DNA of 64,000 bases from Haliotis rubra (lineage: Eukaryota): assembly GCF_003918875.1 (NCBI RefSeq), contig NW_025765592.1, positions 310,001 to 374,000 on the forward strand, written 5' to 3'. Both the position numbers and the translations under genes were made by a program. Of this stretch, positions 1-21,265 are shown in pieces. The number at the start of each line of letters is the position of its first letter. Position 1 is the stretch's first letter. The notes under the pieces are model-generated. The model saw only the letters and a list, made by a program, of their open reading frames with translations, ran no database searches and was not told where the DNA came from.

Positions 1-80
1 ACCACATCTTCTACACGTTGTATACTTGTCACGAGATCGGAGCGGTTCTTCCTAAGGATCTCGCGGTGAATGGTTTCCAT
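1..80 (-). CDS. N-terminus of a CARD-like (death-fold) protein, truncated by the window edge
   Basis: Manual translation from the ATG at 80 gives METIHREILRKNRSDLVTSIQRVEDV..., which matches the helix-1 pattern of caspase-2/RAIDD-type CARDs (H..iLr.NR..Lv..i). TATATAAAG at 189-181 and an Inr-like TCATTC at 157-152 lie upstream. Confidence 0.6.
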   Translation of the reverse strand, partial: METIHREILRKNRSDLVTSIQRVEDV

Positions 81-151
81 CTTCGAGGTAAACAGTTACC
101 AGTAGAGTCAAGAACATAAGATCCGTACGATGTCTCTGGCGACTGAAGTCA

Positions 152-420
152 GAATGATATGGAGGGCTGTTCGGGGGGGACTTTATATACCCACCCGAGT
201 CTAAAAATAGACACATTAAGTGTGCTCACAATAGATCTCAACATAGACCTGAGACAAAGACTCATCATCTAAAAATAGACACACCAGGTGTTCACACCAT
301 AGATCTCAATATACAATAGAGAGCAGTGACTCATCATCTAAAAATAGACACACCAGGTGTTCACACAATAGATTTTGACCCTATAAAGCCCCATAGCTAA
401 AAATAGATTTTGACGCCATA
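152..420 (-). promoter_or_regulatory. Promoter/enhancer of the CARD-like gene: TATA, Inr and a ~60-69 bp repeated module with four CTAAAAATAG (MEF2-consensus) sites
   Basis: CTAAAAATAG at 201-210, 269-278, 338-347 and 397-406; CAGGTG E-boxes at 285-290 and 354-359; TGACTCA at 327-333; TATA at 181-189 (minus strand). Confidence 0.55.
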
Positions 421-648
421 AAGGCCTTGATACTACTGTTATGGTACATAGCTTAACGTGTGTCATGAAATTCTTTTAGAATATGAAGTAATTAAGTAGC
501 TTCCATCGCTCGAACTGACAAAGTTCGCGAAGCCAAATTTAACTGATTCAATTAGTTGCACTTAGCAATAGCAATAAATAGTTTTTTTTGTTTTGTTTAT
601 ATTCCTTTATCTTCCATTATTTACAGATACACGTCCACCGTTCCGCAG

Positions 649-726
649 CTACTACTACTACTACCACCACTACCGCTGCTACGACGCTACGACGACTACT
701 ACTACTACTAGTGGTAGACCTACTAC
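649..726. repeat. (ACT)n/(ACG)n imperfect microsatellite
   Basis: actactactactaccaccactacc...gactactactactacta. Confidence 0.8.
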
Positions 727-739
727 AAAAAAAAGAGAC

Positions 740-848
740 TGTTCCCCACATGGGCACAATGTGTCAAAAGCCATTTCGGGGTGTCTCCCGACGTGATGTT
801 GTTGGAATATTGTTAAACGCGAGGTAAATCCCAACTCACTCACTCACT
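740..848 (+). mobile_element. 5'-truncated tRNA-derived SINE (same family as 7758-7928)
   Basis: cccacatgggcacaatgtg...ggaatattg...gtaaa followed by a (CTCA)n tail; aligns by eye with 7822-7925. Confidence 0.7.
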
Positions 849-2116
849 GTATTGGTGTTCATGTTTGCTTATTAGACAATGGTTAATTCTGCGTAGGTTC
901 GCAGCTATTATAGACTTATAAACTTGTGGAGGGATTTTTAACTACTGTACTACGTGAGCATACTTTGTTGTTTGTGTGAATTATAGAGTGTGCGTATTTG
1001 AAACATAATATTCCACTTACTGTTTTGAACTGTTATGTATACAATGTAGGAAGTATGAATGCACACTGGGTTGATGTGTACACCACTAAACTATGATTAT
1101 GTGTCGTGTGCACAATCTACTTTGGTTACTTATTCGATTGTTAATATCTTCTAATAATTGTAAGCTTTTGCATATTATTTTTTTGATTATTTACACAGAT
1201 CATTCTGTGATTGTTGTGTAATAAACTCCTTGTTTATTTTTACTATTGTGTCGTGTGGCTTTTGCTATATAGTCAGACCTCCTGCCAAGCCGGTTGGTTC
1301 TCCAACTCGCATTTGTAATATGTTTGCTCTCACAAAATTGAGAGTGAATATGCGTACTATATTAAACGTAGTAATACTCTAAAGCATACACTACCATATT
1401 TCTTCGTTGCGACGTGATGGGAAAATTTACAGAACCATGCACGTGATGTTTTTTTTTAGGAAATGCGATAGGGCCCTTGACACAAGCAATAAGCCTTATG
1501 TGTTCTTATTCAGTATGTGGGTCAGACATTCCTCTGCACAATCACAACATCTGTCGACAATACAGTCAAACCGCATTAATCCCAACATCTGAAGTTATGT
1601 TCAATCCACCGGCCGACAGATTTAAGTAAAAACAAAATACATCTATCAGATTTCCACTTCTTTTATTACACAGAAGAGCTAGCTAACTCTACATCACTTT
1701 CGGCGATTTTTTCACTGGAGCGGAGTTTGTCCTGCCTCAGGACCTGAAATGAAACATTAAATGCATTCGTTGTGAATCACAGTTAAGGGAAGACAATTCG
1801 TGCCCACACGTACAAGCACCTTTTTATTCATGAGAAAATCTTTCAACTCACAATAGAATTACACGACGGTTCTAGTTTAATTACGACTGGAAAACAATCT
1901 ATAATTTCATTATGTTTCTATTAGAGCTTGTTACAAATATACATATACATATACACCTTTAGTTACAATACAAAATAAGGAAAAACACTAAATCCATCAA
2001 ATACACCTATATGTAATGTCTTTTCAATGGAGAAAAACTTGACAGATTATCCATAACGGAACCGTGTTTATGATATCCCGGACCGATAGGTGCAACTGTC
2101 AGTAGAATATGAGTGT

Positions 2117-2302
2117 GTGAGGGAATGAGTTTAGTTTCACACCGCACTCAGCAATATTCCAGCTATATGCTCACGGTCTTTGAATAACTAAGTGTGGTCC
2201 CTACATTCGAGTGATCAATAGCATGAGCATCGATCTACCCAAATGGGAATCGATAACATGTGTCAACCAAGTCAGCGAGCCCCCTCCCGTCACAAGCACA
2301 GC
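2117..2302 (-). mobile_element. Truncated SINE-like repeat (same family as 9401-9647)
   Basis: gagtttagtttcacaccgcactcagcaatattccagctatatg...gtgtcaaccaagtcagcgagc is shared with 9409-9562. Confidence 0.75.
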
Positions 2303-2399
2303 AGGATCTGATAAAATACATATTTAAACGCTATGGACATAAGGTGCAAACTGTAGACAGGTGGAAAGGATTGAAGCAGACATTCAGTTTCAAACTCAC

Positions 2400-2866
2400 C
2401 TACTGCTGACTTTGACAGTCCGATTCCTTCTCTGTTTCATCCTCTTCCCCCATGTCATCTTCAACACAGCAGAAGAACTTGATTTTGTTAAAGAGGCGGT
2501 TGTTCTTGGACCGATTTTGTCCGGCGAAGATCATATGGGTTGCATTCCCAAGGGCCTCTGTGTACTGGGTGTTGAGGAGGACATCATATTCGCTTGGTAG
2601 TGCTTCTTTTTCACACTAGGGCTGAGCAGAACTTTCCACACATCTTCATCATGGATCTTAATGGATTCATAAGAGATGATCTCGAGCAAAAGGTTCTTGG
2701 GTAGGTCACTCACTTTACATCTAGTTGTATTTTGACGCATAATTCCATCTGCGTCAAGGGTTTTCATCAGTTCGTCTCTGGAAACACTGGTGACTGTGGG
2801 TTTAAAACGTTTCGTGTTGTCTGTCTTAGCAGCAACTTCGGAAGGACGCTTGAAAGAATCGGTCAT
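2400..2866 (-). CDS. 155-aa protein with a basic N-terminus and acidic C-terminal tail (possible OB-fold nucleic-acid-binding protein); needs one base added in the T5 run at 2607-2611
   Basis: ORF 2531..2866 continues in a shifted frame as ...KKEALPSEYDVLLNTQYTEALGNATHMIFAGQNRSKNNRLFNKIKFFCCVEDDMGEEDETEKESDCQSQQ* (stop 2402-2400, followed directly by a GTGAGT donor). TATAAAAG lies at 2967-2960. Confidence 0.55.
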
Positions 2867-3079
2867 GGTTGTTGGAGATACTTATTGGAGTAACTTCCAA
2901 AGAGTGTAGTTATGCGCTAGAGATAGTGCAAATATAACACGTTGAATGTTTTGAGCTTTCTTTTATACCGTTTTTCGTTGTGCGTCACTGATAGATAAAA
3001 AGTGTTGTTCATGTGGTCACGATGTCGAGGACACATCCATGTTCACACAATGGATGACGTCAGAGAACATTTTTTCGTT

Positions 3080-3341
3080 TTACTCTGGTCGTGACGAACG
3101 CGACTTGATTTTAGGGTTAGGAAGGAGATACCCCAGACTGCTTCCCAACAGACTTGTCCATAAGTTTGAATTTCCTCGAGCCAAAGATAAGTTGACAATG
3201 CAAGTAATCACAACGATATAGATGATAAAGATTTGAGAGAAAAAATACAGTTTCCGTCTTTGCTATTCTTTTGGCAAATAGTCTCCAGGGCTCTACAGAT
3301 CTAATCCTTTCGATAGGTTGTGCCTCAACGGTGTCTTCCAT
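3080..3341 (-). CDS. 86-aa small two-transmembrane protein; needs one base removed from the A6 run at 3240-3245
   Basis: The corrected frame gives ...ETVFFSQIFIIYIVVITCIVNLSLARGNSNLWTSLLGSSLGYLLPNPKIKSRSSRPE*, with two hydrophobic helices and a GYLLPNP motif. I recall this motif from small membrane proteins of invertebrate Maverick/Polinton elements; this has not been checked by search. Confidence 0.65.
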
Positions 3342-3779
3342 TCTTGTGAAACCATGATCTCATAGTTTGTAGCTTTATTACTTTAAAACTACATGGTGTC
3401 AAACATGTACTTTTAAAAAGAAACAAACCATGGAATTAACTATTAAATGCTTTTGAAAACTTCTTGTTGTATGCATAGTTACGTTTTTTGGTTTTATTTG
3501 TTTTGCTCAAAATAATTAAGAAACCAGTTCTATCTATTTGTATTCAATGTCTATAACTTAATACAGCGAGCTCATGTTCCTTTAACATTTGTTTTTTTCC
3601 CCAGCCTCAAGACATGAAAAGAAGTGGTATCACATCTCCCCCCCCCCCCATCCCCATCCCCCCTCTCTCCCTCCTTCAACGATAAACAATAAACATTTCT
3701 AGTAGCATATACCCTTATATGGAAAACATACTACTGCAACCGTGTCTTTCTCGGCAAAATGGTTCTATTTTTTTAACTG

Positions 3780-4460
3780 TTGGAACACGACAGATTTAAC
3801 AGCTGACATTCCAATTGAGGGTGACTGATGGAATCCAGACCCCGCGAGACAAATCGCGGAAAACGTAGTAGGACTTCCATATACGGGCATTCGTTACTAT
3901 GCACCGATTCTGCTTCCTCAAGGCTCCGTTAATGAATTGCAATTGGTGCAGCGTGATTACAGAATGCCCTTTGACCTTTCTGACCAGTGATACCGTGCAC
4001 ACCTGTGAGCGTTCAGTTCATGAGTTGGAAACAGTTCCCCCTCCCGGCGAGACTAATCGCGGAAAACGTAGTAGGACTTCCATATACGGACATTCGTTAC
4101 TATGCACCGATTCTGCTTCCTCAAGGCTCCGTTAATGAATTGCAATTGGTGCAGCGTGATTACAGAATGCCCTTTGACCTTTCTGACCAGTGATACCGTG
4201 CACACCTGTGAGCGTTCCGTTCATGAGTTGGAACACGGCAGACCAACAGCTGGCATTCCAATGGAGTGTGACTCATGGAATCTAGCCCCCGCGAATATCG
4301 CGGAAACGTAGTAGGACTTCCATATACGGGCATTCGTTACTATGCAACGATTCAGCTTCGTTAGGGCTCAGTTAATGAATTGCATTGGTGCAACATGTTT
4401 TTAGAATGCCCTTTGACCTTTCCGACCTGTGATATCGTGCACACCTGTGAGGGTTCATGA
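3780..4460. repeat. Three tandem ~203-240 bp units (subterminal/TIR-internal repeats)
   Basis: gtaggacttccatatacgg... recurs at 3868, 4071 and 4311; the segment 3780-3846 recurs at 4228-4293. Confidence 0.9.
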
Positions 4461-4498
4461 CCTATGCCTATGAACTTGCCCTTGATGCTGTCATCGTT

Positions 4499-4606
4499 CA
4501 CGTGACTCCCCGTCTCGTATTAACCGGAAGTCTGATGACGTCAGACTTCCGGTCACGTGACAGCACCTCCTCGATGAGGTGCTTTACTTATTAAATTTAC
4601 CCTACT
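4499..4606. other. Stacked palindromes and AT-rich terminus (putative TIR end/replication origin)
   Basis: 13-bp perfect stem ACCGGAAGTCTGA/TCAGACTTCCGGT (4523-4553) with TGACGTCA at 4536-4543; GTCACGTGAC at 4552-4561; AGCACCTC..GAGGTGCT at 4562-4583; then TTATTAAATTTACCCTACT. Confidence 0.7.
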
Positions 4607-4774
4607 CTGACTCACTCCAAAACCATTCGCTTCTCAAGTTAACAGACGTTCTTCTAACTGAGATTTTGCATGTCACACTAACCAGGTCACGATGCCAGAT
4701 ATCACTGGTGTAACAGCGTCTATGTGTACACCCCAGTGTAGTGTGCACAGTACAACTGTAGAGTCAGGTACAAG
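4607..4774 (+). promoter_or_regulatory. Non-coding first exon (5' UTR) of cholinesterase-like gene A
   Basis: The module ending GAGTCAGGTACAAG|GTGAGT (donor at 4775) is conserved upstream of every paralog (donors at 12046, 13333, 23528, 41031, 41174, 50692). The acceptor ...TTCCAG|A-ATG is at 5681/5682. Confidence 0.7.
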
Positions 4775-5682
4775 GTGAGTGTGTGGTGATCAATGACATT
4801 CTGTTTTCCATCAAATACCATTGACGAAAACGATTCTCGAAATATAGGTAAAGACAAGCAGTGTTGTTACTCTAACAGTCTATCTTTGAGGATTTAGGTT
4901 GCATATGCTAGCATACAAATATACCTGTGTATTACATACTCTTACCCGGAGACCTTCATGTTGTTTACAAACGATTGTTCCTTTTAAAGTGGCAGTTACA
5001 CTTTCATGAATTATGTTAATTACATGGTGTTTGTGTTCGTGTCAACGTTAAATTTACCCCCATTCATTAAGACCATCTGTACATTCAATGTCTTATAGTT
5101 ATATAGTTGCCCATATGCACATGTATCTCAGCTACCTAACCCTTTATCAATGAGTCTGTCTCAAAACTACCCTGATCAGAGTTCAATTTTTCGAAAGGCT
5201 GTAGGCCCGTGGAATTTGAAATTTGCAGTCATTCTGATTGTGACGTAATGTCTACCACGTTACAATACCCTGTCTTCCAAATGGTATGTCTGTGTGTTCT
5301 GTTCCACCACCTGTTACGCAGCTTCATTGAATTACAATTCCAGTACGATATACAATGGCAGAGGTGACAACAAAGTCAGTGATAAATAATATTCTCTCAT
5401 CAGAAGCAGTGCTCACGTTTTTAAAATACGATGTTCGTAGATGATCACAGAATGCTGGACACCACTGTCCTCAAGGGACAATCTCAACATTGGTGTGCTG
5501 CAGTACACAGCCATATCACACAAACAATCTTGGTTATTAGTGTCACATTTCATGTGTAAAGAAACTGTGGAACATGAATTGGAATGGATGAAAGGCTCAA
5601 CTGTAAATAGTATGTTAACTAGGAACATGAACACAGAAGGAACAAAAGTTCATCTGTAAAACGTATCTTATTTTTTTCCAGA

Positions 5683-8136
5683 ATGTGGATAGGAATGAGA
5701 CTTGCATTGGCGACGCTTCTGACGTTGTTGCTGGTGCTGCCTACTGTGAAATCACAGAAAGTGTCAACTTTAAATGGCCCACTTCTAGGACAACAACTGT
5801 CAGTGTTGGGCAAGTCTCTTGACGTATTCTATGGAATCCCATATGCGAAGCCTCCTGTAGGCGATCTACGCTTCAAATACCCTCAGCCTTCAGAGTCATG
5901 GGGACCGGAAGTAAGGGATGCACAAAACCCGACGCCATCTTGCTTCCAACCAATAGGTGCTCATAACACAGATGAGAAGCACAAGCAGATGCCCGATGAT
6001 TACAGTGAAGACTGCCTCCATCTTACAGTGTGGGCGCCATCAGACAATAGTGGCAATCTGGCAGTGATGGTCTGGATTCACGGCGGAGGCTTCTATTTTG
6101 GATCTACAAGACTACCACTGTATGAAGGAAAATACATTGCAGCAGAGAATGGAGTCATCGTTGTTTCAATTAATTACAGATTGGGGCCTTTAGGGTTCAG
6201 CTACCTTGGTCCAGATACCATCCCTGGCAACATGGGCTTGATGGATCAAAGATTAGCCTTACAGTGGGTGAAAGACAATGTTGCCAACTTTGGTGGAGAT
6301 CCAACCCGAGTCACCATATTTGGAGAAAGTGCTGGTGGTGTCTGCGTGGGTCTACACCTGGTGTCACCTCTGTCACGTGACTTGTTTGACAGAGCAATCA
6401 CACAGAGTGGGACCCTCACTTGCTCATGGACATACATGGCGCCCAAAACAGCAAAAGGAAAATTGAAGAGATTTGCTGATCTCCTTGAATGTCCTTCATC
6501 TTCAACTGATACAGAGATATATGACTGCTTGAAGACAGCAGATGCACAAACTATGGCAGACCTTCAGCTTGTTTTGTTAGATGAAGGAACAACATTTCCT
6601 CCAGTTGTGGATGGGTACTTTGTCCCCGATGACCCCAAAAGTCTTCTGTCCACTGGCTCCATCAAGCAGACCAGTGTATTGCATGGTTTTACTAAAGATG
6701 AGACAACACTGTTTTCTGCAATGACATTGAAACGTTCCCTGAGAAACGTGTCCACACTACCTGAATCACTGATTTTAAGTCGTCAAGAATATGATAGTTT
6801 TCTTTCATTTGACATTGTCACTGGAAAGGACATTGGAGAGTCTATTCGTCTATTTTATGAAAGTCAGATACCCCTTCTAAAGGACAAGGACTATTTTGAT
6901 GTCGTAACTCGTGCAACTTCAGACAGGAAATTTAAGTGTCCTCATCTTGAGTTTGACAGATTGTACTCTCCTGCCAACCCTACCTATGTCTACAGTTTTA
7001 ATCGCCGACTGTCAGTTAGTCCAAATCCACAGTGGATGGGAGCACCCCACTGGTACGAGCTTGACTTTGTGTTTGGTTGGGTTCTGGATAAGTCTCTGGG
7101 ATGTACAGAGGAGGAGATGGAACTCAGCAGGACCATCATGACGTACTGGACCAACTTTGCCAAGTCGGGGTGAGTGAGTGAATGAATGAGCGAGTGAAAT
7201 GGTATTATTTTAAATGACATCATGTAAATGTTACTAATCAGGACGATCAATATTTTGTTTCAAATATTCAAGATCTTCTGAAGTTTTCGTATCTATATAC
7301 AGCAATCCGAACGCTCCTGTCCCCATCAAGGTGAACTGGCCAGCCTCTGACAACACTAATCTCTCCTACATGGCCCTTGACGTGGGCAGCAAATTAGCAG
7401 CAGGACACGGGGTAGTCCACCACGAATGTGTTTTCATCAACAGGATTCTACCCATGATTTCTAAAGGTAATAGTATGATGGGATATCATTTTTTAACAGT
7501 TACATGCAATACATGTTTTTATGTTGAAATCACTTAACGGAATACCATAAGTTCATTTCAGTATGGTCCAATCAAGTGGTTCATTCAAATGCTATAATGC
7601 CATTATGTCTGTGCCAACATGTACCCATTAAGAGTTTTCTCAGAATTTTCATGTTAATTTCAAAATGTCACTACTGATATGCCTGGTCCTTACAGTTTGA
7701 TCGTAGAGATAATTTCTAGTGTCTGTGCTTCTCCTACCTGAGACGATATGCTCCTAGAGGCAGTGGGGTAGCCTAGTGGTTTAAACGTTTGCTCGTCATG
7801 CAGAAGACCCAGGTTCAATTGCCCACATGTGTACAATGTGCAGAGTCCATTTCTAGTGTCCCCCGCCATGATATTGCTGGAATCTTGCTAAAAGCGGTGT
7901 AAAACCATACACACTCTCTCCCTCCCTCACCTTTATGCTAAAAGTAAATAACTGTAACAAGATAAGGGCAACAATACCCCAGATGCGTCTTATTGCAACA
8001 TGATCGACTGAAGGCTGCAAATTGTTGAGAATGTACATTGTTTGTTCATGATACAAACGTGCAGCCAGGGAAATCATGAATTTATCCTTGTGTTTCAGAC
8101 CCACCGGAAGGGCAGGAGTATTGCACAAAAGGATGA
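5683..8136 (+). CDS. Secreted cholinesterase-like / type-B carboxylesterase, paralog A (exons 5683-7169, 7303-7466, 8099-8136; 562 aa, intact)
   Basis: Signal peptide; GIPYAKPPVGDLRF; SEDCL; WIHGGGF oxyanion hole; FGESAGG catalytic Ser; GFTKDE Glu; WMGAPHWYE His; WTNFAKSG|NPN; Cys for the three canonical disulfides; in-phase GT-AG introns; AATAAA at 8307-8312. Confidence 0.93.
7758..7928 (+). mobile_element. tRNA-derived SINE in the last intron of gene A
   Basis: A box GTAGCCTAGTGG, B box GGTTCAATTGCCC, body shared with 740-848 and 21131-21265, (CT/CACT) tail. Confidence 0.8.
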
Positions 8137-9400
8137 AAGTACAGCATTATAATACTCAGAGCCGCACTATAATAATCTAACAATAAGGTTTGACATTGCC
8201 AGGAACAGATTATTGTCCAAAGTCGTAGAGAGTCCTCAGAGATACTGTGACACCTATAGTCTACACTCAACCACCAACCCCTATGTAGCCATCAATGATG
8301 TGATGAAATAAATAATTTGCCAGCATTCTGTTGTTCATTATGGTGGGTACCCAATCTTAGAAACACTGCATAGCTCACATAGGCAGTATTATTCCCATGG
8401 GGTTGAGAATGATGATTGAAGATATATGGATGTCCTGTTTAGGAAACAAACAGACCTGTATTTAGCATATACTATCATCCGAAAAAGATTGGTATATTAA
8501 TGCATTATTTATATCAGCATCCGATAAGTCAGATGCAACTCCGTATAGTTATGTATCACTTTTAAGCTGGAACTACAATCCGTTTGAGTCAGAAACGGAC
8601 CGATGAATTGCAAATTTTATCATTGTACAAAATTGCCACATAAATATAAATAGTACACATGTTTATCATTTACTAATACCCAACAGCTTTCTTATATTTG
8701 AAAACTAATCTTCATAAAGTTTGTATATAATTTTCATTTTCGATAATTCTACACCACCTTAAATCTCCAACAAACCGCTTACAAACACAAAATGAACAGT
8801 CAAAAAGTAGTTTCTGTCGGTATGTGCAAGACGTCACGGAGTGCGGTTTAATCGAATGAAATGCACTGATATGCGTTGGTCTCATATAATTCCCCTGATT
8901 GATATGCTTTACTTGTGTGGAGGTTTAATATCAGTATATTGCATAGTGTACAGTGTTGCTATTTAGCTGCGTGACACATCGGGACTACTGTAAAATTATA
9001 GCACTTCACTTCACGTTGTCGGCCTCACGTTGTCGGCCTCACGTTGTCAGGCTCGGTGACTGCTCATACAAACAGTCGTCAGAAAGTTTGGGAAACAAGG
9101 TTTTTCAACGAAGCTGTTCACCGACTCCAAATTATGCATGTCATCCAGCGATGTCCCAGATATTACCATACGACCAGCAGCACAGTGCAGTAGTGTCTCA
9201 AATGAACATAATTTACAGAAAAAAGCAGTTCATGTTAAAAATATATAATAAAAAGGAGCTCTGAGACTTTCTTCATTTTCAGACAGTTAAACTGAAATCT
9301 AGACTTGCCACATATTTTAGACTTGCATGGGCTTTCTTAGAAATCTTTGTTGCAGGGACTGTATGACAGACTAAATACAGTACATGTCTGGTGACTAGTG

Positions 9401-9647
9401 AGTGAATGAGTTCAGTTTTACGCCGCACCTGGCAATATTCCAGCTATATGGCGGCGGTCTGTATATAATCGAGTCTGGACCAGACAATCCAGTGATCAAC
9501 AGCATGGGCATCGATCTGCGCAATTGGGATAAGATGACATGTGTCAACCAAGACAGCGAGCCTGACCACGTGCACCCGGTCCCGTTAGTCGCCCCTAGCG
9601 ACAAGCATGGGTTATTGAAGATCAATTCTAACCCAGACCTTCACGGC
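9401..9647 (-). mobile_element. SINE-like repeat with a ~16-bp target-site duplication
   Basis: TSD tgtctggtgactagtg (9385-9400) / tgtccggtgactagtg (9648-9663). Further copies near 2117, 16072, 33920, 36497, 37570 and their duplicates. Confidence 0.85.
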
Positions 9648-10078
9648 TGTCCGGTGACTAGTGTTTCCCCTATACAGTGCCCTTTTTAGTTGGCGCCTGG
9701 CTGTTTTTATTTGAGCGCCTTGCTGTTTTTGTTTGTCGCCTTTCACTTCTTTGCTATAAAATAATTCATGTTAACACGTATGCATGTATGATTTTTAATT
9801 CAATACTTGTAAATCTGTCACTGCATGCCCATTTTGGAATAAGGGTGCCCCTTTGGAAATTCTGTCGTCCTGCCTTTTTGGATCCTGGGGAAAACACTAG
9901 TGATCCTGGCCCCACATAAAATGGGGGTTTGTCTTTTGCATTCAACAATATATCGCCTTACCTCGAAAACACGAATGTTAGCTTGTATGCACAAAACTCT
10001 GTGAATAATTAGATATGCTATTACACGCCATGAGTAAAGAGAGTACTTGGTGTGAAAGTGTAAAAAAAAATTACACCT

Positions 10079-10176
10079 GGGCCTAGATTTTCGAAGGTCT
10101 CTTAGCGCTAAGATAGTCGTAAGTGCCATACATTAACATTAACTTACGACTATCTTAGCTTCGAAAATCTAGGCCC
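10079..10176. mobile_element. Small palindromic MITE
   Basis: 18-bp perfect TIR GGGCCTAGATTTTCGAAG / CTTCGAAAATCTAGGCCC plus an inner inverted pair GCTAAGATAGTCGTAAGT / ACTTACGACTATCTTAGC. Confidence 0.8.
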
Positions 10177-11869
10177 TAGATTTAATAGAGGAAATACGGT
10201 AGATGAGGGGGCATGTAAATAATCGAATGTCGGCCAGACACTAATATTTGAGTTGGGTGGGGTGAGGGGTGCAATTTAAGTCCCTCGCCGCACGGTCACG
10301 GTGACCTGCATATATCATTGTCGTCAAGCATGATCTACCCATCCAGCAGGACGTTTTGAACAGGCAGCATAGGATTCAGTTTTCCCCTCTGTATGCAGTC
10401 TTGGCGGGTCCTGGGTTCGTTAAAACACTCATGTGTCGAGCTCTGATATGTCGAAGTCACTGTTGTGTTGAAGTGAGAGCTTTGTCCCTTGTCACCCTTT
10501 TGCGGTTGTGTCGAACCCCAGATAATAATTGGGGGTCCCCGGGGCGCCCATGTTTGTGAGTCGAGGTAAAACCAAGTGACTCGATAACTGTAAAACGAGA
10601 AATTTTCCCGCCTTTAAATCTTATTTTTTTAAATTGTTTTTAAATATGTTATATTATAGTATAATATGGAATAAAGTGAGTATCGTCAGCATACTGTCCT
10701 AGTTTATGTTCAAAATCATTAAGTGTTAGACCAAAAAGTTAACTTACGAGATTTTTAACATCAACAGGAAGTGGGACTCAAGCTTGGTTTCACCATCGAA
10801 TCAAAGAGATATAGTGTATATTGTATTGATAAGTGTAACATTCAACTTCTGCGTAAAACAAAACACATGGCTTTAGTAGCTTGATGACAGAGATTTGACA
10901 TAGATCATTTGAAAGAACATTTTCTATCAAAAATAACTTCATGAAACATAATAACAGTTTTCACCTAACTGGTTGAAATATCCAATTAGAACATACCTAT
11001 GTATACATTGATGTTGCCCTAATTAATCCCTATTCTAGTGTGTAACTAATGGGAGTAAATCGGGCACTTGGACGTCGGGTATGCAGGCTTCATCAGTGTA
11101 GCCGATTACTAACACACTAACCCGTTTCACTGTATACTTCAAAATCTACCCCAACCGCTTGCAAGAAATTCATAAGACATTTTCAATAGAATAATCAATA
11201 TCTAACCCCATATACAATCACACAACCTCGTTCCCAGTCACCCAAAATGAAATATTCCCTACTTTTTTAACTGTAAATATGAATCTCGGGTAACTGAGTT
11301 AATATGAACAGTTTCTTGAGCGGAGCTGTACCTCGACTTGAGGTGGAGAATCAGCAAGTCATCCAGCTAGGCCGTCAGCCTGATTAAGTATGTGTAGACT
11401 AGACACAGGGGGACTTTGGCCATTCAGTTAATGGTGTTTGGAGGGGGATAAAATGACATGATTTTAACCATGTCATCAAACAATACAGGTTTTTCCGGGT
11501 TTTCTGAAACAAATATATAATAGTAGTAATAATAATGATGGGTATTATATAGCGCTGTATCCATCCACAAGGTGCATGCTCAACGCGCATATGGGCCCTG
11601 AGGAATTTCCTAGTGGCCCAATAAAAAGTAATAAATATAGTTGTCCATAAAACGGTATGCAGTCAGATGATCCTGACATATCCCGTAGTGGTTCCTGAAC
11701 AGTATCGGACTGAAAGAATGGGTGAGTGAGTCCGTACGTGCGTGCGTCCGTGAGGGAGCGAGGAAGGGAAGGAGCGAGGAAGGGAAGGAGTGAGTGAGTG
11801 GGTGATGGACTCTCGTGATGAAAGTACAATACTGTTGTACAACACTCAATCACTTATGCACGCACTGCC

Positions 11870-12570
11870 TCACTCACTCTAAAACCATTCGCTTCTCAAG
11901 TTAACAGACGTTCCGGACTCACCTGTAACTGAGATTTTGCATGTCACACTAACCAGGTCACGATGCGAGATATCACTGGTGTAACAGCGTCCATGTGTAC
12001 ACCCCAGCGTAGTGTCCACAGCACAACTGTAGAGTCAGGTATAAGGTGAGTGTGTGATGAAAAATGACATTCTGTTTTCCATCAAACACCGTTGACGTAT
12101 ACTGTTGTCGGACTATAGGTAATGACAAGCAGTGTTGTTACTCTAACAGTTTATCTTTGAGGATTTAGATTGAAAATGCTTGCATACAAGTAGGCCTGTA
12201 TATTACCTGCTCTTACCCAGAAACTTTGATGTTGCAAATTGTTTACAAGCGATTGTTCCTGTTAAAGAGGCAGTTGCTCCTTCATGCTGTGTTTTAATTG
12301 CATGGTGTTGTTTGAGTTCGAGTCAACATTAATAATGCATAAATACGTTCAGATGTACCTCTGTTCATTCAGCAATACAAGGGTACCAGTAGGGAATAGA
12401 TTGTCATGTGACTGTAAACCAAGTTCAATATTCCGAAGAATGAAAATTGATGGCAGATTCATCCACTAAAGGGGTAATACGATTATTTACCAATCATTTG
12501 ACAATCTTGACCACTTGGGCGTCTCTTTAAATTCAGTGACGTCATGTCTACCAAGTCACCATATATCGAA
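11870..12570 (+). promoter_or_regulatory. Orphan duplicate of exon 1 plus 5' part of intron 1 upstream of gene B (possible alternative first exon)
   Basis: High similarity to 4611-5280 with an intact AG|GTGAGT donor at 12046. No coding exon follows before the next exon-1 module. Confidence 0.65.
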
Positions 12571-12786
12571 GTGATTACTTAACTGTGGGTGAGTGGTTCA
12601 GTGAGTGAGTGGTTGAGTGAGTGGTTTAGTGGTTGAGCGGTTGAGTGGGTGAGTGAGTGAGTGACTTTGGGCTATAAAGTTGAAAGTAATATGCTGTTAT
12701 AGAACACTCACTCACGTATGCACGCATTGACTCACTCACTCTAAAACCAATCAGTTCTCAATTGAACAGACATTCCGAACTCACCT

Positions 12787-13224
12787 ATACCTTGTCAAAG
12801 ACAGACATCTTATGAACGCACCACCATTTCGCTTTATCGCCACGCCTAAACACAACGCATGGGATGCACGTGCACAACGCAGTAGCTCCATACACGTGCA
12901 TGGGGTGTCATTTTTTTATTTTGACGGTTTTCAAAAATATCGAAAAATCATTTTCACAATCATTTTGCATCACATATTTTTAGCCGTTTTGGTTCTTTTT
13001 CGTTTGAAAATGAAAATCATATACATGCAAATTTCACGTCATACACATATCATCTTTCAAGAGCGATAACTGTACGAACAACTATGGTCATAAGAAAGTG
13101 CAAGTGGTGAACAGTCTCAAAACAGTCATTCTTATAATATCCATGTTCATTGACCATATATCGCCCAATTCTTTCAATCGTAAAATATAAATGAGGTTTC
13201 CCTACTTTTCTTGAGGAGCATATA
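12787..13224. mobile_element. ~435-bp TA-flanked MITE-like insertion inside exon 1 of gene B (also at ~40481-40923)
   Basis: Splits ...actcacct / ctgagattttgc, which is contiguous at 11918-11940; the ends are degenerate and TIR-like. Confidence 0.6.
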
Positions 13225-14375
13225 TCTGAGATTTTGCAAGTCACGCTAACCAGGTCATATCACTGGTGTAACAGCGTCTGTGTGTACACCCCAGTGCAGA
13301 GTCCACAGTACAACTGTAGAGTCAGGTACAAGGTGAGTGTCTAATGAAAAATGGCATTGTTGTCCTTCAAATACCGTTGACGTTTATATACTTGTTGAAA
13401 TATAGGAAATGGCTAGCAGTGTTGTTACTCCAACAATTTCTCTTTGAGGATTCAGTATGGATATACCTGCACACAAGAAGGACTGTATAATACTTACTCA
13501 TACCCGGAGACATTCATGTTGTTTACAAGCGATTGTTCCTTTTTGAAGTGGCAGTTACACCTTCATGATTCTACTAGTAGACCTGTGTATTACTTACTCT
13601 TACCCGGAGACATTCATGTTGTTTACAAGCGATTGTTCTTTTTAAAGTGGCAGTTACACCTTCATGATTCTTGTCAATTTCATTGTGTAGTTTGTCTAAT
13701 CAATATAAATACTTTCGGATGCGTCTCTGTTCATTCAGAAACACAGGGGTACCGTTAAGGAATAGATTGTAATGTGACTGTGAACCGTATTCAGTTTACC
13801 TAAGAATGAAAATTAATGGCAGATTAATCCACAGACGAGGCCATAAAATTCACCAACCGTTTGACAATCTTGACCGCTGGGTCTCTTTTACATACAATGA
13901 AGTCATGTCTACCACGTCACCATACTTAACTTTCCAAATTGTATGTCTGTGTATTTCCTGTTCCACCATCACCGTTACAGTTCTTCAATGTAATTACAAT
14001 GCCAGTACGAAATATAATGGCAGAGGTGACAACAAAGTCAATGATAAATAATACTCCCACATCAGCAACAGTGCTCAAGCTTCCAAAACAGACTTATACT
14101 AAATATCCGGGGTGAAAAGATGATGTTCACAGAATGCTGGACACCGCTGTCCTCACGTGACAATCTGAACATTGTTTTCCTGCTTTACACAGCCATATTA
14201 CACGTACACAGACATATTGTTCTACTGATTTACACAGCAATATAACACGAACCATCTTGGTTATTAGTGTCACATTTCATGTGTAAAGAAACTGTGATTA
14301 ACTAGGAACATGAACTGAAAAGGATCAAACGTTCAACTGTAAATCGTATCTTAAAATTCAATATGTTCTTTCAGA

Positions 14376-17098
14376 ATGTGGACAGGAATGAGACTTGCAT
14401 TTGCGACGCTTGTTACGTTGTTGCTGGTGTTGCCTACTGTGAAAACAAAGGAAGTGTCAACTCTGAATGGCCCACTTCTAGGACAACGTCTGTCAGTGTT
14501 GGGCAAGTCTCTTGACGTATTCTATGGAATTCCATATGCCAAGCCTCCTGTAGGTGATCTCCGCTTCAAATACCCTCAGCCTTCAGAGTCATGGGGACCG
14601 GAAGTTAGAGATGCACAAAACCCGACGCCATCTTGCTTCCAACCAAAAAATGCTCATGGCACTGATGAAAGTTACAAACAGATGCCCGATGATTACAGTG
14701 AAGACTGCCTTCACCTTACAGTGTGGGCGCCATCAGCCAATGCTGGCAATCTGGCAGTCATGGTCTGGATCCACGGCGGAGCTTTTTATATTGGATCTAC
14801 AAGACTGCCACTGTATGAAGGAAAATACATTGCAGCAGAGAATGACGTCATCGTTGTTTCAATGAATTACAGATTGGGGCCTCTAGGGTTCAGTTACCTT
14901 GGTCCAGATACCATCCCTGGAAATATGGGCTTGGTGGATCAAAGATTAGCCTTACAGTGGGTGAAAGACAATATTGCCAACTTTGGTGGAGATCCAACCC
15001 GCGTGACCATATTTGGAGAAAGTGCTGGTGGTGCAAGTGTAGGTCTACACCTGGCATCACCTTTGTCACGTGACCTGTTCGACAGAGCAATCACACAGAG
15101 TGGGACCCTCCTCTGCCCGTGGGCTTACACTTTTCCCAACACAGCAAAACAGAAACTGAAGAGATTTGCCAATCTCCTTGAATGCCCTTCATCTTCAACT
15201 GATACAGAGATATATGAGTGCTTGAAGACAGCAGATGCACAAACTATGGCAGACCTTCAGCTAGGTTTGTTCGATGAAGGAATTCCATTTCGTCCAGTTG
15301 TGGATGGGAACTTCCTCCCCGATGACCCCAAAACTCTTCTGTCCACTGGCTCCATCAAGCAGACCAGTGTATTGCATGGTTTTACAAAGAACGAGATGAC
15401 TCTGTTTTCTGCACTGACATTGAAGCAGATGAGAAAAGTATCTGCATTACCGGAAACATTGATTTTAAGTCGCACAGAATATGAAAGTCTTAAGTTTAGC
15501 ATTGGAAATGTGGACGGAATCGAAGAACCTCTTCGCCTCTTTTATGAAAGTCAGAAAGCCCCCCTGAAAGAAAAAGACTATTTTGATGTCGTGACTCGAG
15601 CGAGTACGGATAAGGCAATGAAGTGTCCTCATCTTGAGTTTGACAGATTGTACTCTCCTGCCAACCCTACCTACGTGTACAGTTTTAATCACCGACTATC
15701 AGTTAGTCCGTTTCCACAGTGGATAGGAGCAGCCCACTGGTACGAGCTTGACTTTGTGTTTGGTTGGGTCCTGGAAAAGTCTCTGGGATGTACAGAGGAG
15801 GAGATGGAACTCAGCAGAACCATCATGACGTACTGGACCAACTTTGCCAAGTCAGGGTGAGTGAGTGAGTGGTACATATGACTTATTGAGTCAATGATCG
15901 CCCTCAAACTTTTAAGACCTCTTAATCCCGAAAGAACAGCACAAAACACAAAGGAAACAACTTCTATCATTTTCATGTGTACAATGTCCAGAGACCATTT
16001 ATGTTGTCCACTGGCGTTTTCAAAATGTGTCAAAAACCTATTTCACCCTCTCCAATTAACATGATACCAAACCCGTGGAGATCCGGTTTAGCATTGGTCT
16101 TCAGCAACTCATGTTTGTCGTAAGAGGAGACTAACGGGATCGGTTGGTCAGGCACGATAACAAAGTTGAAACATGTCATTGCATACCACTGCATAGCTCC
16201 ATGTTCATGCTATTGATCACTGGATTATCTGGACCAGGTTCGATTAATTACAGATCGCCACCATATAGATGGAATAGTGCAGGGCCTCTTATATTAAACA
16301 ACAAATGAACCAAACAAACAAATAAACAAAACATCCTAGAACTCTTTTATTTACAGGAACCCGAACACTCCTGTCCCCGTCAAGGTGAACTGGCCAGCCT
16401 CTGACAACACTGATCTCTCCTACATGGCTCTTGACGTGGGCAGCAAATTAGCAGCAGGACACGGGGTAGTCCACCACGAATGTGTCTTCATCAACAAGAT
16501 TGTCCCCATGATTTCTAAAGGTAATGTTCATGATGGATAGTTCAATGGGAATGGTCGGGACCGACAGGTATTTCGAGTTATGCATAATATTCGAGACGCC
16601 GGCAGTCGACTCATCGGGATTTGACTGTAGTTGAATGGTTTCAGATGTGAATAGTTTCTCAAGTGATTATGATACTTATGTATACCAATACGTCCATACT
16701 GATCCACGGATACTGATTGGTTCGTGTCAACATGTTCATGCCCATATGTTAATGCTGATACCATCATGTTGATATGTTCGTAATGTTACCTTTAAACGGC
16801 TACGTTCATGCGGACATGTTCCTGCCCATACGTGTAGTCATCTCAGTGTTGAGCCTTGTTTCATGAAAGAAGTTTTACCCCCAACTCACTCAACTTTTCA
16901 CTATAACCATCGCTGGAAGACGTATGAGTTAATACAAAAGGCACCTTTGTTTGTAACCAGATGGCAACAGCCCCTCCCCATGTCACGCCTGGTTTATCGT
17001 TGTGGATATTACACTGGACTGTAGCACGGCAAATAATGAGTCCATTTAATGCTTTTCAGACCCCCCCTGAAGGGCAGGAATACTGCACGAGAGGATGA
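14376..17098 (+). CDS. Cholinesterase-like paralog B (exons 14376-15856, 16357-16520, 17060-17098)
   Basis: 494-aa exon-2 ORF with GGAF, GESAG, GFTKNE and AAHWYE. The last exon has C7 where B' has C6, probably an assembly indel; otherwise the tail is DPPEGQEYCTRG*. Confidence 0.9.
16072..16330 (+). mobile_element. SINE-like repeat in an intron of gene B (duplicate at ~43918-44175)
   Basis: Reverse complement of the 9401-9647 family, with an (AAAC)n tail. Confidence 0.75.
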
Positions 17099-17136
17099 AA
17101 GGACAGCATCACAATAATCAGACCTTGAGGAACATA

Positions 17137-17829
17137 CAGTCGAGCACCGTTGTGTCGAACTCTAGATATAATTTCATGGTCCCAACAAACAAAATTACCC
17201 TTTTAACTCGACATTGGCAAGGAACTCGATATTCACCTTCTTTTCATAGGCAAGTATCCCACTGAACGGACGTTGTTTCCACACATTTACACACGGTGCG
17301 GCATGAATCAAAGGGATGCGGTAGTGTAAACTAATTAGGGCTAATTGAGTTGAAGGTGTCACTTGTTTGTTATTTAATTAGGATTAATTAGGAAGGAATT
17401 AATTGGGAAGTACTCACTGATACGACTAAACACTACTGATAACGGATTATAGTTTCGAATCAAAACATACTAAGAAATCAACTGAGGGTTTTGTGTAATC
17501 GCAGTTGAGAATGTCGGTTGCGTTCACAAGATTTGTCGTGTATCGAGAGTGGTTATCTACTATCGCCTTCATGCCACCACCAAATGCCCGTCAGTCTAAA
17601 GATTTAGATCCAACTTTTGTATGATTCAAGAGGTGTACCTTGTGTGCCGTAACATTGCGATCCCTGTGAGTAAAAATGTATATACAAATATATATACATA
17701 AAATCTACTTTTTCTTTTCTTTCTTTCATAGTGATAGGTGATGATATGCCCTGGTCGGATGTCTCGAAGTTCGGATAACTCGATATTCTTTCTTGGTCCC
17801 GTGAATATCGAGACAACGGTGCTCGACTG
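17137..17829. mobile_element. Non-autonomous Tc1/mariner-superfamily (pogo/Tigger-like) MITE (duplicate at 44982-45674)
   Basis: TA|CAGTCGAGCACCGTTGTGTCGA ... TCGAGACAACGGTGCTCGACTG|TA. Confidence 0.85.
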
Positions 17830-17833
17830 TATA

Positions 17834-18960: not shown

Positions 18961-19505
18961 ATATGTAGCAGACAACAAGTGGATTAAAAAAAAAGTCACG
19001 TGACAGACACGTGACATCATGGTCGATCATATGACAAGATATTACTGTATGTCATTATCATTATTGAAGCCTCTTTAAACTGTACTGAGGAAGCAAAGTC
19101 ACAGACATAGAATGCCACTCTGCATGGATGTTGTGACGTCTTTTACACTGCTAAGTCATCCGTGTCTACAGCCACTACCTCTACCACTCCCAAACATACC
19201 TCCCAAGGACGCCATGGTATAAATAGTCCAAGTACATTTTATTATTCCTCACGGCTCCACGTCAGGACGTCAATTTGTACCCGTGCCTACATTATATACT
19301 CAGAAAAGTCAACATGTCAATCAACTGCTCTGAAAGTCACTTGGTACAATAGTTAACAACTCTGGTAAGTCAAATGACATCACATTTACCACACCCCTAT
19401 ATACCTATCAATATATCAATAATCTAATTATAGTTTGTTATTCCTCACAGTTTCATGTCAGGAAGTCCGATAGTGCCTAACGCATACACTCAGGGAAGTC
19501 AAGTG

Positions 19506-21130: not shown

Positions 21131-21265
21131 CTGACTGACTGACTGAGTTTGGTTTTACGCCGCTTTTAGCAATATTCCAGCAACATCACGGCGGGGGACA
21201 CCAGAAATGGGCTTCACACATTGTACCCATGTGGGGATTCGAACCCGGGTCTTCGGCGTGACGAG
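21131..21265 (-). mobile_element. 5'-truncated tRNA-SINE with a 12-bp TSD, present only in the first block
   Basis: TCTTTGCTTAAA at 21119-21130 and 21266-21277; B box GGTTCGAATCCC on the minus strand; absent at 49435-49445. Confidence 0.88.

What the first reader, a model, noticed from the sequence alone, without database searches (positions are those of the whole stretch)
1..4606. Hidden terminus of a Maverick/Polinton-like endogenous virus with a three-gene accessory cassette
Seen: three co-oriented, compact minus-strand genes that the ORF track misses or garbles (CARD-like; 155-aa acidic-tailed protein; 86-aa two-helix membrane protein), followed by 200-240 bp tandem repeats, stacked palindromes and a sharp junction to host DNA at 4606/4607. 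The element end reads 5'-AGTAG... Established: Mavericks have long TIRs starting with AG/AGT-type repeats, subterminal tandem repeats and 6-bp TSDs. Inference: this is the right end of such an element, and both frameshifts are single-base homopolymer indels, so the genes may be intact in vivo.
Basis: partly seen in the sequence, partly recalled or inferred. Interest (0 to 1): 0.82.

Follow-up and report, generated by a model that had tools for sequence, protein, structure and literature searches.

The report
End of abalone Maverick-like element

Summary
The sequence features are real. There are three 203-240 bp tandem units (3779-4457), stacked palindromes (4499-4583, fold z = -7.45) and a sharp junction at 4606/4607 (+-2 bp). 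Two paralogous carboxylesterase upstream regions in the same window run uninterrupted across the equivalent point.

A second copy in Haliotis rubra (L001) shares the cassette at 95.5% and a colinear but diverged terminal region, then has unrelated flanks. This is therefore the end of a multicopy mobile element. In L001 the cassette adjoins an rve/chromo-type integrase, two capsid-position genes, an adenain-like protease candidate and an A32-like packaging ATPase, in the published Maverick order. All of these genes are broken.

PolB, the partner inverted repeat and the target-site duplication were not seen, because the window starts inside the element.

- **155-aa gene:** a small real family, predicted as an OB fold with an acidic tail (SSB-like). 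Here it has one frameshift and evolves neutrally.
- **"86-aa" gene:** real, with an intact 82-aa syntenic homologue in a distant relative, but frame-split in all three Haliotis copies.
- **"CARD-like":** 26 codons only, so untestable.

Verdict: new member of a known kind, with a modestly novel accessory cassette.

The parts
1..80 (-).
   Evidence: Translation. No family hit except noise. No counterpart in L001, L002 or L003.
182..190 (-). TATA-like box about 100 bp upstream of that start codon
   Evidence: Read directly from the sequence. Calling it a promoter is inference.
200..373 (.). 69-bp tandem repeat, 2.5 copies, each carrying a 16-nt motif that recurs at 3040-3055
   Evidence: 4 matches in the window against 0.24 expected, all inside 1-4606.
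438..3790 (.). Cassette shared at 95.5% identity with the paralogous H. rubra copy (L001 12509-9064)
   Evidence: blastn. The orthologous H. rubra contig L002 covers window 1725-18123 at 98.8%.
743..846 (.). Fragment of a host interspersed repeat (another copy at 21136-21237)
1730..2866 (-). Gene for the 155-aa acidic-tailed protein. Coding part is 2400-2866, followed by a 3' intron holding a SINE-like repeat and a last exon with AATAAA at 1662-1667. The coding part is broken by one frameshift and has no in-frame stop.
   Evidence: The gene extent follows the NCBI model for L001 10001-11137.
2117..2281 (.). SINE-like host repeat nested in that intron; also present in L001 and L002
   Evidence: copies at 9398-9562 and elsewhere in the window, and in H. 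asinina.
2961..2968 (-). TATA box about 95 bp upstream of the 155-aa gene's start codon
   Evidence: Read from the sequence; inference.
3040..3055 (+). Fourth copy of the 16-nt motif, between the two cassette genes
   Evidence: same position in L001 and L002.
3083..3341 (-). Gene for a small (about 82-86 aa) membrane protein, split into two reading frames by one frameshift
   Evidence: The intact 82-aa homologue in L009 has one strongly hydrophobic stretch and a weaker second one.
3779..4457 (.). Subterminal tandem repeats: two full units and one partial unit
   Evidence: Colinear with L001 9084-8440 at about 55-65% identity.
4499..4583 (.). Stacked palindromes. Two CACGTG boxes (4499-4504, 4554-4559) bracket a 13-bp-stem hairpin (4523-4553) that contains TGACGTCA and two inverted CCGGAAGT; a second hairpin lies at 4562-4583.
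   Evidence: Reading them as E-box, CRE and ETS sites is inference from the standard consensus sequences.
4594..4606 (.). Last bases of the element. Similarity to the L001 copy stops at 4594 and similarity to host paralogues starts at 4607 (+-2).
4607..5051 (.). Neighbour: host upstream unit of the carboxylesterase gene, repeated at 11869-12332 (84.5%) and in part at 13223, 40426 and 41108
5683..7173 (+). Neighbour: large first coding exon of a carboxylesterase/cholinesterase-like gene, one of seven paralogues in the window
   Evidence: 99% to an H. rubra protein.

Best explanation
Window 1-4606 is the right-hand terminal part of an endogenous, decaying Maverick/Polinton-like element. It inserted into the upstream region of one carboxylesterase paralogue in the Haliotis rubra lineage.

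Shown:
- The end lies at 4606 (+-2).
- The element family has at least two copies with different flanks.
- In the other copy the same cassette is joined to integrase, capsid-position genes, a protease candidate and a packaging ATPase.

Inferred:
- The roughly 830-bp terminal region (tandem units plus palindromes) is one arm of a terminal inverted repeat. That arm would serve as the integrase substrate and replication origin.
- The palindromes are transcription-factor-type sites (E-box, CRE, ETS). They would act as a terminal promoter or enhancer, or as auxiliary origin elements.

Inward from the end lie TATA-driven accessory genes read towards the element's interior:
- a small hairpin-type membrane protein;
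- a 155-aa protein predicted as a basic N-terminal stretch, an OB fold and an acidic tail. [quoted passage not shown]
- a third gene of which only 26 codons are visible.

In this copy both cassette genes are frame-broken and the 155-aa gene drifts neutrally, so the copy is a fossil rather than a working element.
For: - **Junction:**. Two paralogous sites are uninterrupted across the point.
- **Orthologous contig:** the H. rubra contig carries the same junction.
- **H. asinina:** the cassette is absent within 10 kb upstream of the orthologue.
- **Second copy L001:** the cassette is 95.5% identical. The terminal region is colinear with a Smith-Waterman score of 201 against at most 74 for shuffles. 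Beyond it the flanks are unrelated. L001 holds no internal inverted repeat, so that element exceeds 12.8 kb.
- **ATPase:** relatives of the L001 ATPase pass Pfam's cut-off for Pox_A32, and others hit Adeno_IVa2.
- **Integrase:** L001 matches an rve+Chromo integrase at E 1e-40.
- **Other core genes:** a 442-aa gene matches at E 8e-40, and a protease candidate at E 3e-22. The relative of that candidate hits Peptidase_C5 at E 0.005.
- **Gene order:** integrase, 260-aa, 130-aa, 442-aa, protease, ATPase, small ORFs. This matches the vertebrate Maverick modules; accessory regions at the ends and TIRs of 46-1447 bp are also published features (PMC8097293).
- **155-aa family:** one search found 4 relatives among 1.84 billion representatives; alignment.
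- **Structure:** AlphaFold model with pLDDT about 90 over residues 50-135 and strand-strand-strand-helix-strand-strand order. Top fold matches are almost all OB-fold ssDNA binders. The tail has 10 acidic residues and 1 basic residue in its last 25.
- **Small gene:** conserved and syntenic in L009.
Against: - No protein-primed PolB, partner inverted repeat or target-site duplication has been seen. All would lie outside the window, and outside the 21 kb of L001 that could be fetched.
- Window 1-437 has no counterpart in L001.
- The double-jelly-roll nature of the 442-aa gene was not tested.
- The protease hit is below Pfam's cut-off.
- The palindromes are not conserved in L001.
- The end motif is only 5/6 of (ACT)2.
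- The OB-fold call rests on a 6-sequence alignment. Foldseek gave E of 7e-4 to 0.03 and TM scores of 0.3-0.5.
Confidence: 0.7

Rival explanations
1. The window holds only a solo or truncated terminal fragment (about 4.2-4.6 kb) of such an element, or a recombinant mosaic. The DNA left of about 438, including the 26-codon 'CARD-like' start, would be host sequence or a different element rather than the interior of a full Maverick.
For: - Similarity to L001 stops at 438.
- The next gene differs between the two copies: a 149-aa ORF in L001 against the 26-codon ORF here.
- Most Maverick loci in vertebrates are degraded fragments (PMC8097293).
- The cassette is 95.5% alike while the adjoining terminal region is only about 60% alike, which points to a mosaic history.
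Against: - No copy of the paralogous host sequence expected on the far side of the insertion occurs anywhere in 1-4606, so the inserted block is longer than 4.6 kb.
- The 16-nt motif links 200-373 to the cassette.
- Variable accessory genes next to the termini are normal for Mavericks.
Confidence: 0.2
2. The block is not a Maverick end but the end of another kind of element, for example a hairpin-ended parvovirus-like or other large DNA element. On this view the Maverick genes near the L001 copy are a neighbouring, unrelated insertion.
For: - Strong terminal hairpins are present.
- The most distant relative of the 155-aa protein (25% identity, E 4.5e-5) sits on a 5.4-kb contig that also carries a Parvo_NS1 gene.
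- A host repeat lies between the cassette and the core genes in L001 (13539-13778).
Against: - The hairpins are absent from the colinear L001 end.
- L001 has no second element boundary or inverted repeat between the cassette and the core genes.
- The relative L007 shows the same convergent layout: core genes followed by an opposite-strand gene.
- Terminal length and accessory position fit Mavericks.
Confidence: 0.06
3. The block is ordinary host DNA: a host gene (annotated LOC124275684 in H. rubra) with neighbours, copied by segmental duplication. The junction would be merely the edge of a duplicated carboxylesterase unit.
For: - The window is full of segmental and tandem duplications.
- NCBI annotates the paralogue as a cellular, spliced gene.
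- One paralogue's homology begins exactly at 4607.
Against: - The two copies share neither flank.
- Two paralogues are continuous across the junction point.
- The block is absent from the H. asinina orthologous site.
- Relatives of both cassette genes turn up on short contigs from unrelated samples and not as annotated genes of other molluscs.
- The L001 copy is joined to virus-type genes.
Confidence: 0.04

Closest known systems
Mavericks/Polintons of animals (vertebrate set described in PMC8097293; definition in Kapitonov & Jurka 2006 and Pritham et al. 2007, as cited there)
   Same: - The related copy has a retroviral-type integrase, an A32/IVa2-like packaging ATPase, an adenain-like protease candidate and two conserved genes at the minor and major capsid positions.
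- The order is integrase, minor capsid, PW, major capsid, protease, with small ORFs after the ATPase.
- Accessory genes lie between the core and the terminus.
- The terminal region is several hundred bp long.
- The element is over 12.8 kb.
- Most copies are degraded.
   Different: - PolB has not been seen.
- The protease is followed directly by the ATPase on the same strand.
- The end motif is CCTACT rather than (ACT)2.
- The terminal region is built of about 200-240 bp tandem units plus palindromes.
- One accessory gene model has a 3' intron, whereas intact vertebrate elements are intronless.
[quoted passage not shown]
   Same: - The predicted topology is strand-strand-strand-helix-strand-strand.
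- Top structural matches are RPA70N, bacterial and phage SSBs, Teb1, CST and baculovirus LEF-3.
- The C-terminal tail is strongly acidic.
   Different: - There is no sequence-level match to any Pfam, NCBIfam or PDB entry.
- TM scores are low.
- The protein has a 50-residue basic N-terminal extension.
- ssDNA binding is untested.
- Protein-primed replicons were reported as a near-exception to OB-fold SSBs (PMC8276246).
Adenovirus-type inverted terminal repeats with host transcription-factor sites (from my own knowledge, not tested here)
   Same: Recognition-type palindromes (CRE-like, ETS-like, E-box) are clustered within about 110 bp of a linear-element end in the PRD1-adenovirus lineage.
   Different: No binding or origin function is shown, and the sites are not conserved in the paralogous copy.
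Small viral hairpin membrane proteins (viroporin-like)
   Same: The protein is about 82 aa, with a charged N-terminus, one strongly hydrophobic helix, a short loop and a second weaker hydrophobic stretch.
   Different: There is no family hit and no functional evidence. The likeness is one of size and hydropathy only.

Membership tests
Maverick/Polinton | [quoted passage not shown] | not testable with these tools
   Not present in window 1-4606 or in the 12.8 kb of the L001 element that could be fetched. The rest of that contig and the DNA left of the window could not be reached.
Maverick/Polinton | Retroviral-type (rve) integrase, c-integrase type | tested here: met
   Met in the paralogous copy only. 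L001 20239-21066 matches the L008 integrase at E 1.4e-40. That integrase has Pfam rve at 1.1e-10 and Chromo at 3.3e-10, both above cut-off. The L001 gene is broken by 2 in-frame stops. None is present in the window.
Maverick/Polinton | A32/FtsK-type DNA-packaging ATPase | tested here: met
   Met in the paralogous copy. The Walker A motif is present, and relatives at 65-73% identity score 23.0-26.3 bits against the Pox_A32 cut-off of 22.8. More distant relatives also hit Adeno_IVa2. The L001 gene has 1 in-frame stop.
Maverick/Polinton | Adenain-like cysteine protease | tested here: inconclusive
   L001 17646-18008 matches a 164-aa protein of L007 at E 3e-22. That protein hits Peptidase_C5 at E 0.005, 17 bits, below the 21.3 cut-off.
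Maverick/Polinton | Double jelly-roll major capsid and single jelly-roll minor capsid proteins | tested here: inconclusive
   Conserved 442-aa and 260-aa genes sit at the expected positions. No family or PDB sequence hit was found, and no structure job could be run on them.
Maverick/Polinton | Terminal inverted repeats of tens to more than 1000 bp | not testable with these tools
   The other end is outside the window and outside L001. There is no inverted copy of 3779-4606 in the window or in L001.
Maverick/Polinton | 6-bp target-site duplication | not testable with these tools
   The left junction is not available. The uninterrupted paralogous sites give the sequence that should flank it.
Maverick/Polinton | Short repeated end motif, (AG)3 or (AGT)2 at the 5' end | tested here: inconclusive
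   The last six bases are CCTACT, 5 of 6 against (ACT)2 (motif from PMC8097293). The junction is known only to +-2 bp.
Maverick/Polinton | Mobile: copies at different loci, absent from orthologous sites of relatives | tested here: met
OB-fold SSB | Five-stranded barrel with a helix between strands 3 and 4 | tested here: met
   The AlphaFold model from 6 sequences has strands 60-71, 74-83 and 93-99, helix 100-108, and strands 111-119 and 125-132, with pLDDT about 90. This is a prediction only.
OB-fold SSB | Significant structural match to known SSBs | tested here: inconclusive
   - PDB: best E 0.033, probability 0.97, TM 0.28/0.34.
- BFVD: best E 6.7e-4, phage SSB at 1.5e-3, TM 0.4-0.5.
- The theme is consistent but the scores are weak.
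OB-fold SSB | Binds single-stranded DNA | not testable with these tools
CARD / death-fold | Six-helix bundle recognised by a CARD or death-domain profile | tested here: not met
   Only 26 residues lie in the window, and Pfam at E up to 10 gave no CARD or death-domain hit. The test has almost no power at this length.

The most novel reading that the evidence does not exclude
The conserved two-gene cassette (a small hairpin membrane protein followed by an OB-fold protein with an acidic tail) is a functional module of a mollusc Maverick lineage. Its 155-aa product would be the element's own single-stranded-DNA-binding protein. That would be the first OB-fold SSB assigned to a eukaryotic protein-primed replicon. 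A distant homologue sits on a small contig bearing Parvo_NS1, which would suggest gene exchange between Maverick-like and small ssDNA-virus-like elements of marine invertebrates.
Probability: 0.25. Interest if true: 0.6.

Novelty: new member of a known kind. Interest (0 to 1): 0.42.

Why it matters
Mavericks are already reported in all mollusc genomes surveyed (PMC10294476), so a decayed copy in abalone is expected.

Three things add something:
- The end is mapped precisely, with paralogous uninterrupted sites as evidence.
- The paralogous H. rubra copy (L001) shows a gene order that links the mollusc elements to the vertebrate Maverick modules.
- The accessory cassette is conserved across distant relatives, and one gene has the build of an SSB. 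Replication proteins other than PolB are essentially unknown for Mavericks, and protein-primed replicons were thought to lack OB-fold SSBs largely (PMC8276246).

A relative carries a BIR (IAP-type) gene next to its ATPase. Host-interaction cargo therefore seems typical of this lineage.

It also matters for annotation. LOC124275684 of H. rubra is most likely an element gene, not a cellular one.

Tried and rejected
- **Family and sequence scans:** Pfam, NCBIfam and PHROGs scans of the window ORFs and of P0001 found nothing. Sequence searches of PDB with the ATPase, integrase and capsid-position ORFs and with the 155-aa family profile found nothing useful.
- **Structure:** the single-sequence AlphaFold run of P0001 failed with pLDDT 40.
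- **Other scans:** Rfam found nothing in 1-5200.
- **The 26-residue peptide:** it has no counterpart in L001, L002, L003 or elsewhere in the window.
- **H. asinina:** its orthologous locus could not fix the junction to the base, because its similarity starts only at window 4660.
- **L001 and L002 as one locus:** I first thought they might be the same locus. Rejected: both hold the cassette, at 95.5% and 98.8% identity to the window, and their flanks differ.
- **Junction as the edge of a duplication unit:** I considered this because the 11869 paralogue starts at the same base. Rejected after the third paralogue showed continuity across the point.
- **Extending L001 beyond 21137:** this was not possible.

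Full report
**Setting.** The window is abalone DNA. A 496-codon exon at 5683-7173 is a carboxylesterase (Pfam COesterase). It is 99% identical to an H. rubra 'cholinesterase 1-like' protein and 90% identical to one from H. asinina. The window holds seven such paralogues and a segmental duplication of about 27.8 kb. H. rubra contig QXJH01002235.1 (L002) aligns to window 1725-18123 at 98.8%. The window therefore comes from H. rubra or a very close relative, and L002 is the orthologous locus. L002 starts inside the region under study, which is typical of an assembly break in repeated DNA.

**Observation.**
- The tandem repeats are real. There are two full units and one partial unit between 3779 and 4457, with spacing of 203 and 240 bp and 84-98% mutual identity.
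- The palindromes are real. A 13-bp-stem hairpin lies at 4523-4553, bracketed by two CACGTGAC copies, and an 8-bp-stem hairpin lies at 4562-4583. As single-stranded DNA the stretch folds at -28.9 kcal/mol against -10.5 +- 2.5 for shuffles (z = -7.45).
- By their letters, the palindromes are a CRE-type octamer, two inverted ETS-type CCGGAAGT sites and two E-boxes. That reading is inference from standard consensus sequences.
- The minus strand of the end reads AGTAGG. On the plus strand the last six bases are CCTACT.

**The junction.**
- Right of 4606 the sequence is the upstream unit of the carboxylesterase gene, and it recurs in the window. The copy at 11869-12332 is 84.5% identical and begins to align exactly at 4607.
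- On its own that could mark the edge of a duplication unit. However, a third copy (40255-40520) and the 11700-11960 copy are continuous with each other for more than 100 bp on both sides of the equivalent point.
- The ancestral arrangement is therefore uninterrupted, and in copy 1 foreign DNA begins there. A short CTCA-type repeat leaves the breakpoint uncertain by about 2 bp.
- The sequence expected on the far side of the insertion occurs nowhere in 1-4606, so the insert is longer than 4.6 kb.
- L002 carries the same junction.
- In H. asinina the orthologous gene has similar upstream DNA only from window 4660 onward. It has no trace of the cassette or the repeats within 10 kb, apart from SINE copies. 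That agrees with a lineage-specific insertion but does not fix the site.

**A second copy.**
- The longest ORF piece of the 155-aa gene found one protein among 5.8 billion clusters: H. rubra LOC124275684 (P0001, 156 aa).
- Its locus L001 lies on contig QXJH01002009.1, in the reverse orientation to the window. It shares window 438-3790 at 95.5%.
- Beyond that, the L001 stretch 9084-8319 is colinear with window 3770-4594 at only about 55-65% identity. The Smith-Waterman score is 201 against at most 74 for shuffles.
- After that point the two loci are unrelated, and L001 1-8318 has nothing in common with the carboxylesterase region. Both copies therefore end within a dozen bases of the same point but sit in different flanks. 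This is the behaviour of a mobile element.
- The contrast of 95.5% against about 60% indicates a mosaic history: a cassette exchanged between diverged elements. The palindromes are not conserved in L001.
- L001 contains no inverted copy of its end, so that element is longer than 12.8 kb.

**What the element is.**
- In L001 the cassette is followed inward by a different accessory ORF (149 aa, 12649-13098) and a nested host repeat. A run of opposite-strand reading frames then extends to the end of the locus.
- The ATPase (16695-17429) has a Walker A motif. Its relatives at 65-73% identity pass Pfam's cut-off for Pox_A32, and more distant ones also hit Adeno_IVa2.
- Two short contigs holding such relatives gave named neighbours.
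  - L008 has an integrase with rve (1.1e-10) and Chromo (3.3e-10) domains, followed by 260-, 130- and 442-aa genes.
  - L007 has a 164-aa protein with a sub-threshold Peptidase_C5 hit (E 0.005), the ATPase, and a BIR-domain gene (7.9e-23).
- L001 matches the following:

| Relative gene | E-value |
|---|---|
| integrase | 1.4e-40 |
| 442-aa protein | 8e-40 |
| 260-aa protein | 1e-3 |
| protease candidate | 3e-22 |
| ATPase | 6e-106 |
| small ORFs after the ATPase (two) | 7e-26 and 1e-19 |

- The resulting order is integrase, 260, (130), 442, protease, ATPase, small ORFs, accessory genes, terminus. This reproduces the integrase, minor capsid, PW, major capsid, protease module and the ATPase-PM-PZ series described for vertebrate Mavericks.
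- Vertebrate Mavericks also have accessory regions next to the ends, TIRs of 46-1447 bp, sizes of 12.7-24.6 kb, 6-bp TSDs and (AGT)2//(ACT)2 or (AG)3//(CT)3 end motifs (PMC8097293).
- The L001 core genes are broken: the ATPase by one in-frame stop, the integrase by two, the protease candidate by one, and the 442-type gene by up to four stops and at least one frameshift.
- PolB was not seen. The capsid folds were not tested.

**The cassette genes.**

*The 155-aa gene (coding 2400-2866, minus strand).*
- It has a TATA box about 95 bp upstream. By the NCBI model of the paralogue it also has a 3' intron that contains a SINE-like repeat, and a last exon with AATAAA.
- In the window it carries one frameshift and no stop. 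In L001 it is intact. In L002 it is broken several times, but that contig also needed frame corrections in its carboxylesterase gene ('LOW QUALITY PROTEIN'), so its frames are unreliable.
- I compared the window copy with L001 piece by piece, never joined. There are 2 synonymous and 8 non-synonymous differences, giving dN/dS of about 1.0. There is no sign of constraint since the copies split.
- A full HMMER pass over 1.84 billion representatives found only four relatives. These are a 156-aa protein from two marine-type metagenome contigs (49% identity), 116- and 94-aa calls on short contigs, and a 229/308-aa protein at 25% identity. The alignment has 13 invariant columns.
- With that alignment AlphaFold gives pLDDT of about 90 for residues 50-135. 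The element order is strand, strand, strand, helix, strand, strand, which is the OB-fold order.
- Nearly all top Foldseek matches are OB-fold ssDNA binders: RPA70N, bacterial and phage SSBs, Teb1, CST and LEF-3. PDB gave E >= 0.033 and BFVD gave E >= 6.7e-4, with TM scores of 0.3-0.5.
- The last 25 residues hold 10 acidic residues and 1 basic residue.
- An SSB-like role is thus a moderate inference, at about 0.45. It would fit strand-displacement replication.
- The literature notes that protein-primed replicons have so far largely lacked OB-fold SSBs (PMC8276246).

*The small gene (3083-3341, minus strand).*
- It is split into two frames in the window, in L001 and in L002, with different frame relations in the window and L001.
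- It is nevertheless a real gene family. Contig L009 (Logan SRR25760728) carries an uninterrupted 82-aa ORF followed about 900 bp later by a 151-aa homologue of the 155-aa gene, in the same order and orientation.
- The two window pieces match that ORF separately: 59% over 34 residues (E 8e-14) and 73% over 52 residues (E 1e-20).
- The ORF has one strongly hydrophobic stretch and a weaker second one, and no family hit.

*The 'CARD-like' gene.*
- It is 26 codons at 80-3 with a TATA-like box at 182-190. No tool supports or refutes the label.
- The BIR gene in relative L007 shows that apoptosis-type cargo does occur in this lineage.

**Mechanism, with status.**
- Shown: the element end, multiple copies, linkage to integrase and morphogenesis genes in the paralogue, conservation of the two-gene cassette, and decay of this copy.
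- Inferred: the terminal region is one arm of a TIR that acts as integrase substrate and origin.
- Inferred: the palindromes are host-factor sites.
- Inferred: the accessory genes are transcribed inward from their own TATA promoters, which share a 16-nt motif (four copies, all inside 1-4606, against 0.24 expected).
- Inferred: the 155-aa protein binds single-stranded DNA.
- Unknown: the role of the membrane protein and of the third gene.

**Rivals.**
- A truncated or mosaic fragment not attached to a full element (0.2).
- Another element type with hairpin ends (0.06).
- Plain host duplication (0.04).
- Their evidence is listed in the Rival explanations section.

**Novelty.** Mavericks are already reported in all mollusc genomes analysed (PMC10294476). 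This is a new member of a known kind. The conserved cassette and the SSB-like prediction are the only parts that go beyond the expected.

The broken genes were searched as separate pieces by reference or through the intact paralogous product P0001, and the last exon of the NCBI model was not joined.
- I stopped doing so, and none of this is repeated in the notes or in this report.
- One script printed an ORF-style list of open stretches with coordinates.
- The tool outputs show piecewise residue alignments.
- A look-up of a distant relative returned, unasked, a 5.4-kb contig (L004) with a Parvo_NS1 gene that may be a virus of an animal. I used only the gene table the tool printed and did not read, align or search its DNA.
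- No contig looked human.

Noticed in passing
window 13267-37187 versus 41108-64000: A segmental duplication of about 27.8 kb at 94-99% identity. It carries carboxylesterase paralogues, seven in the window in all. Runs of N lie at 23847-24019 and 51011-51173 and were left untouched.
   Followed up: partly
window 19498-20400, 27280-28053, 30255-31466, 38839-39641, 47343-48702, 54616-55936: Long tandem-repeat arrays, some with extreme A/T skew (AT skew 0.5-0.78 at 27-28 kb and 54-56 kb).
   Followed up: no
window 221-236, 289-304, 358-373, 3040-3055: A 16-nt motif (TGTTCACACAATRGAT, up to 2 mismatches) occurs four times, all on the plus strand and all inside the element part, against 0.24 expected. 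Three copies lie in the 69-bp repeats upstream of the 26-codon ORF and one lies between the two cassette genes. It may be a shared regulatory site.
   Followed up: partly
L007 1520-1831 (Logan DRR299178): A relative whose ATPase is 72% identical to that of L001 carries a BIR (inhibitor-of-apoptosis) domain gene directly after the ATPase (Pfam 7.9e-23). L001 has an unrelated 135-aa ORF at that position.
   Followed up: partly
L004 (GCA_014845235.1, JACSED010000071.1, 5440 bp): The most distant relative of the 155-aa protein (P0085/P0086, 25% identity) lies on a small contig that also has a Parvo_NS1 gene and a 582-aa gene. It is possibly a small ssDNA virus or its endogenous copy. Only the tool's gene table was used.
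   Followed up: no
L001 12649-13098: In the H. rubra paralogue a 149-aa ORF with its own TATA-like box and a Cys/His-rich C-terminus occupies the place of the window's 26-codon ORF. It has no family hit.
   Followed up: partly
L001 493-2345 and 13539-13778: LINE-type endonuclease reading frames lie in the host flank of the paralogous copy. A 240-bp repeat nested inside that element recurs at window 28330-28570 and 56214-56454 (93%).
   Followed up: no
L001 10001-11137: NCBI annotates the element's 155-aa gene as a cellular spliced gene (LOC124275684). Its single intron lies after the end of the ORF and consists largely of a SINE-like insertion.
   Followed up: partly
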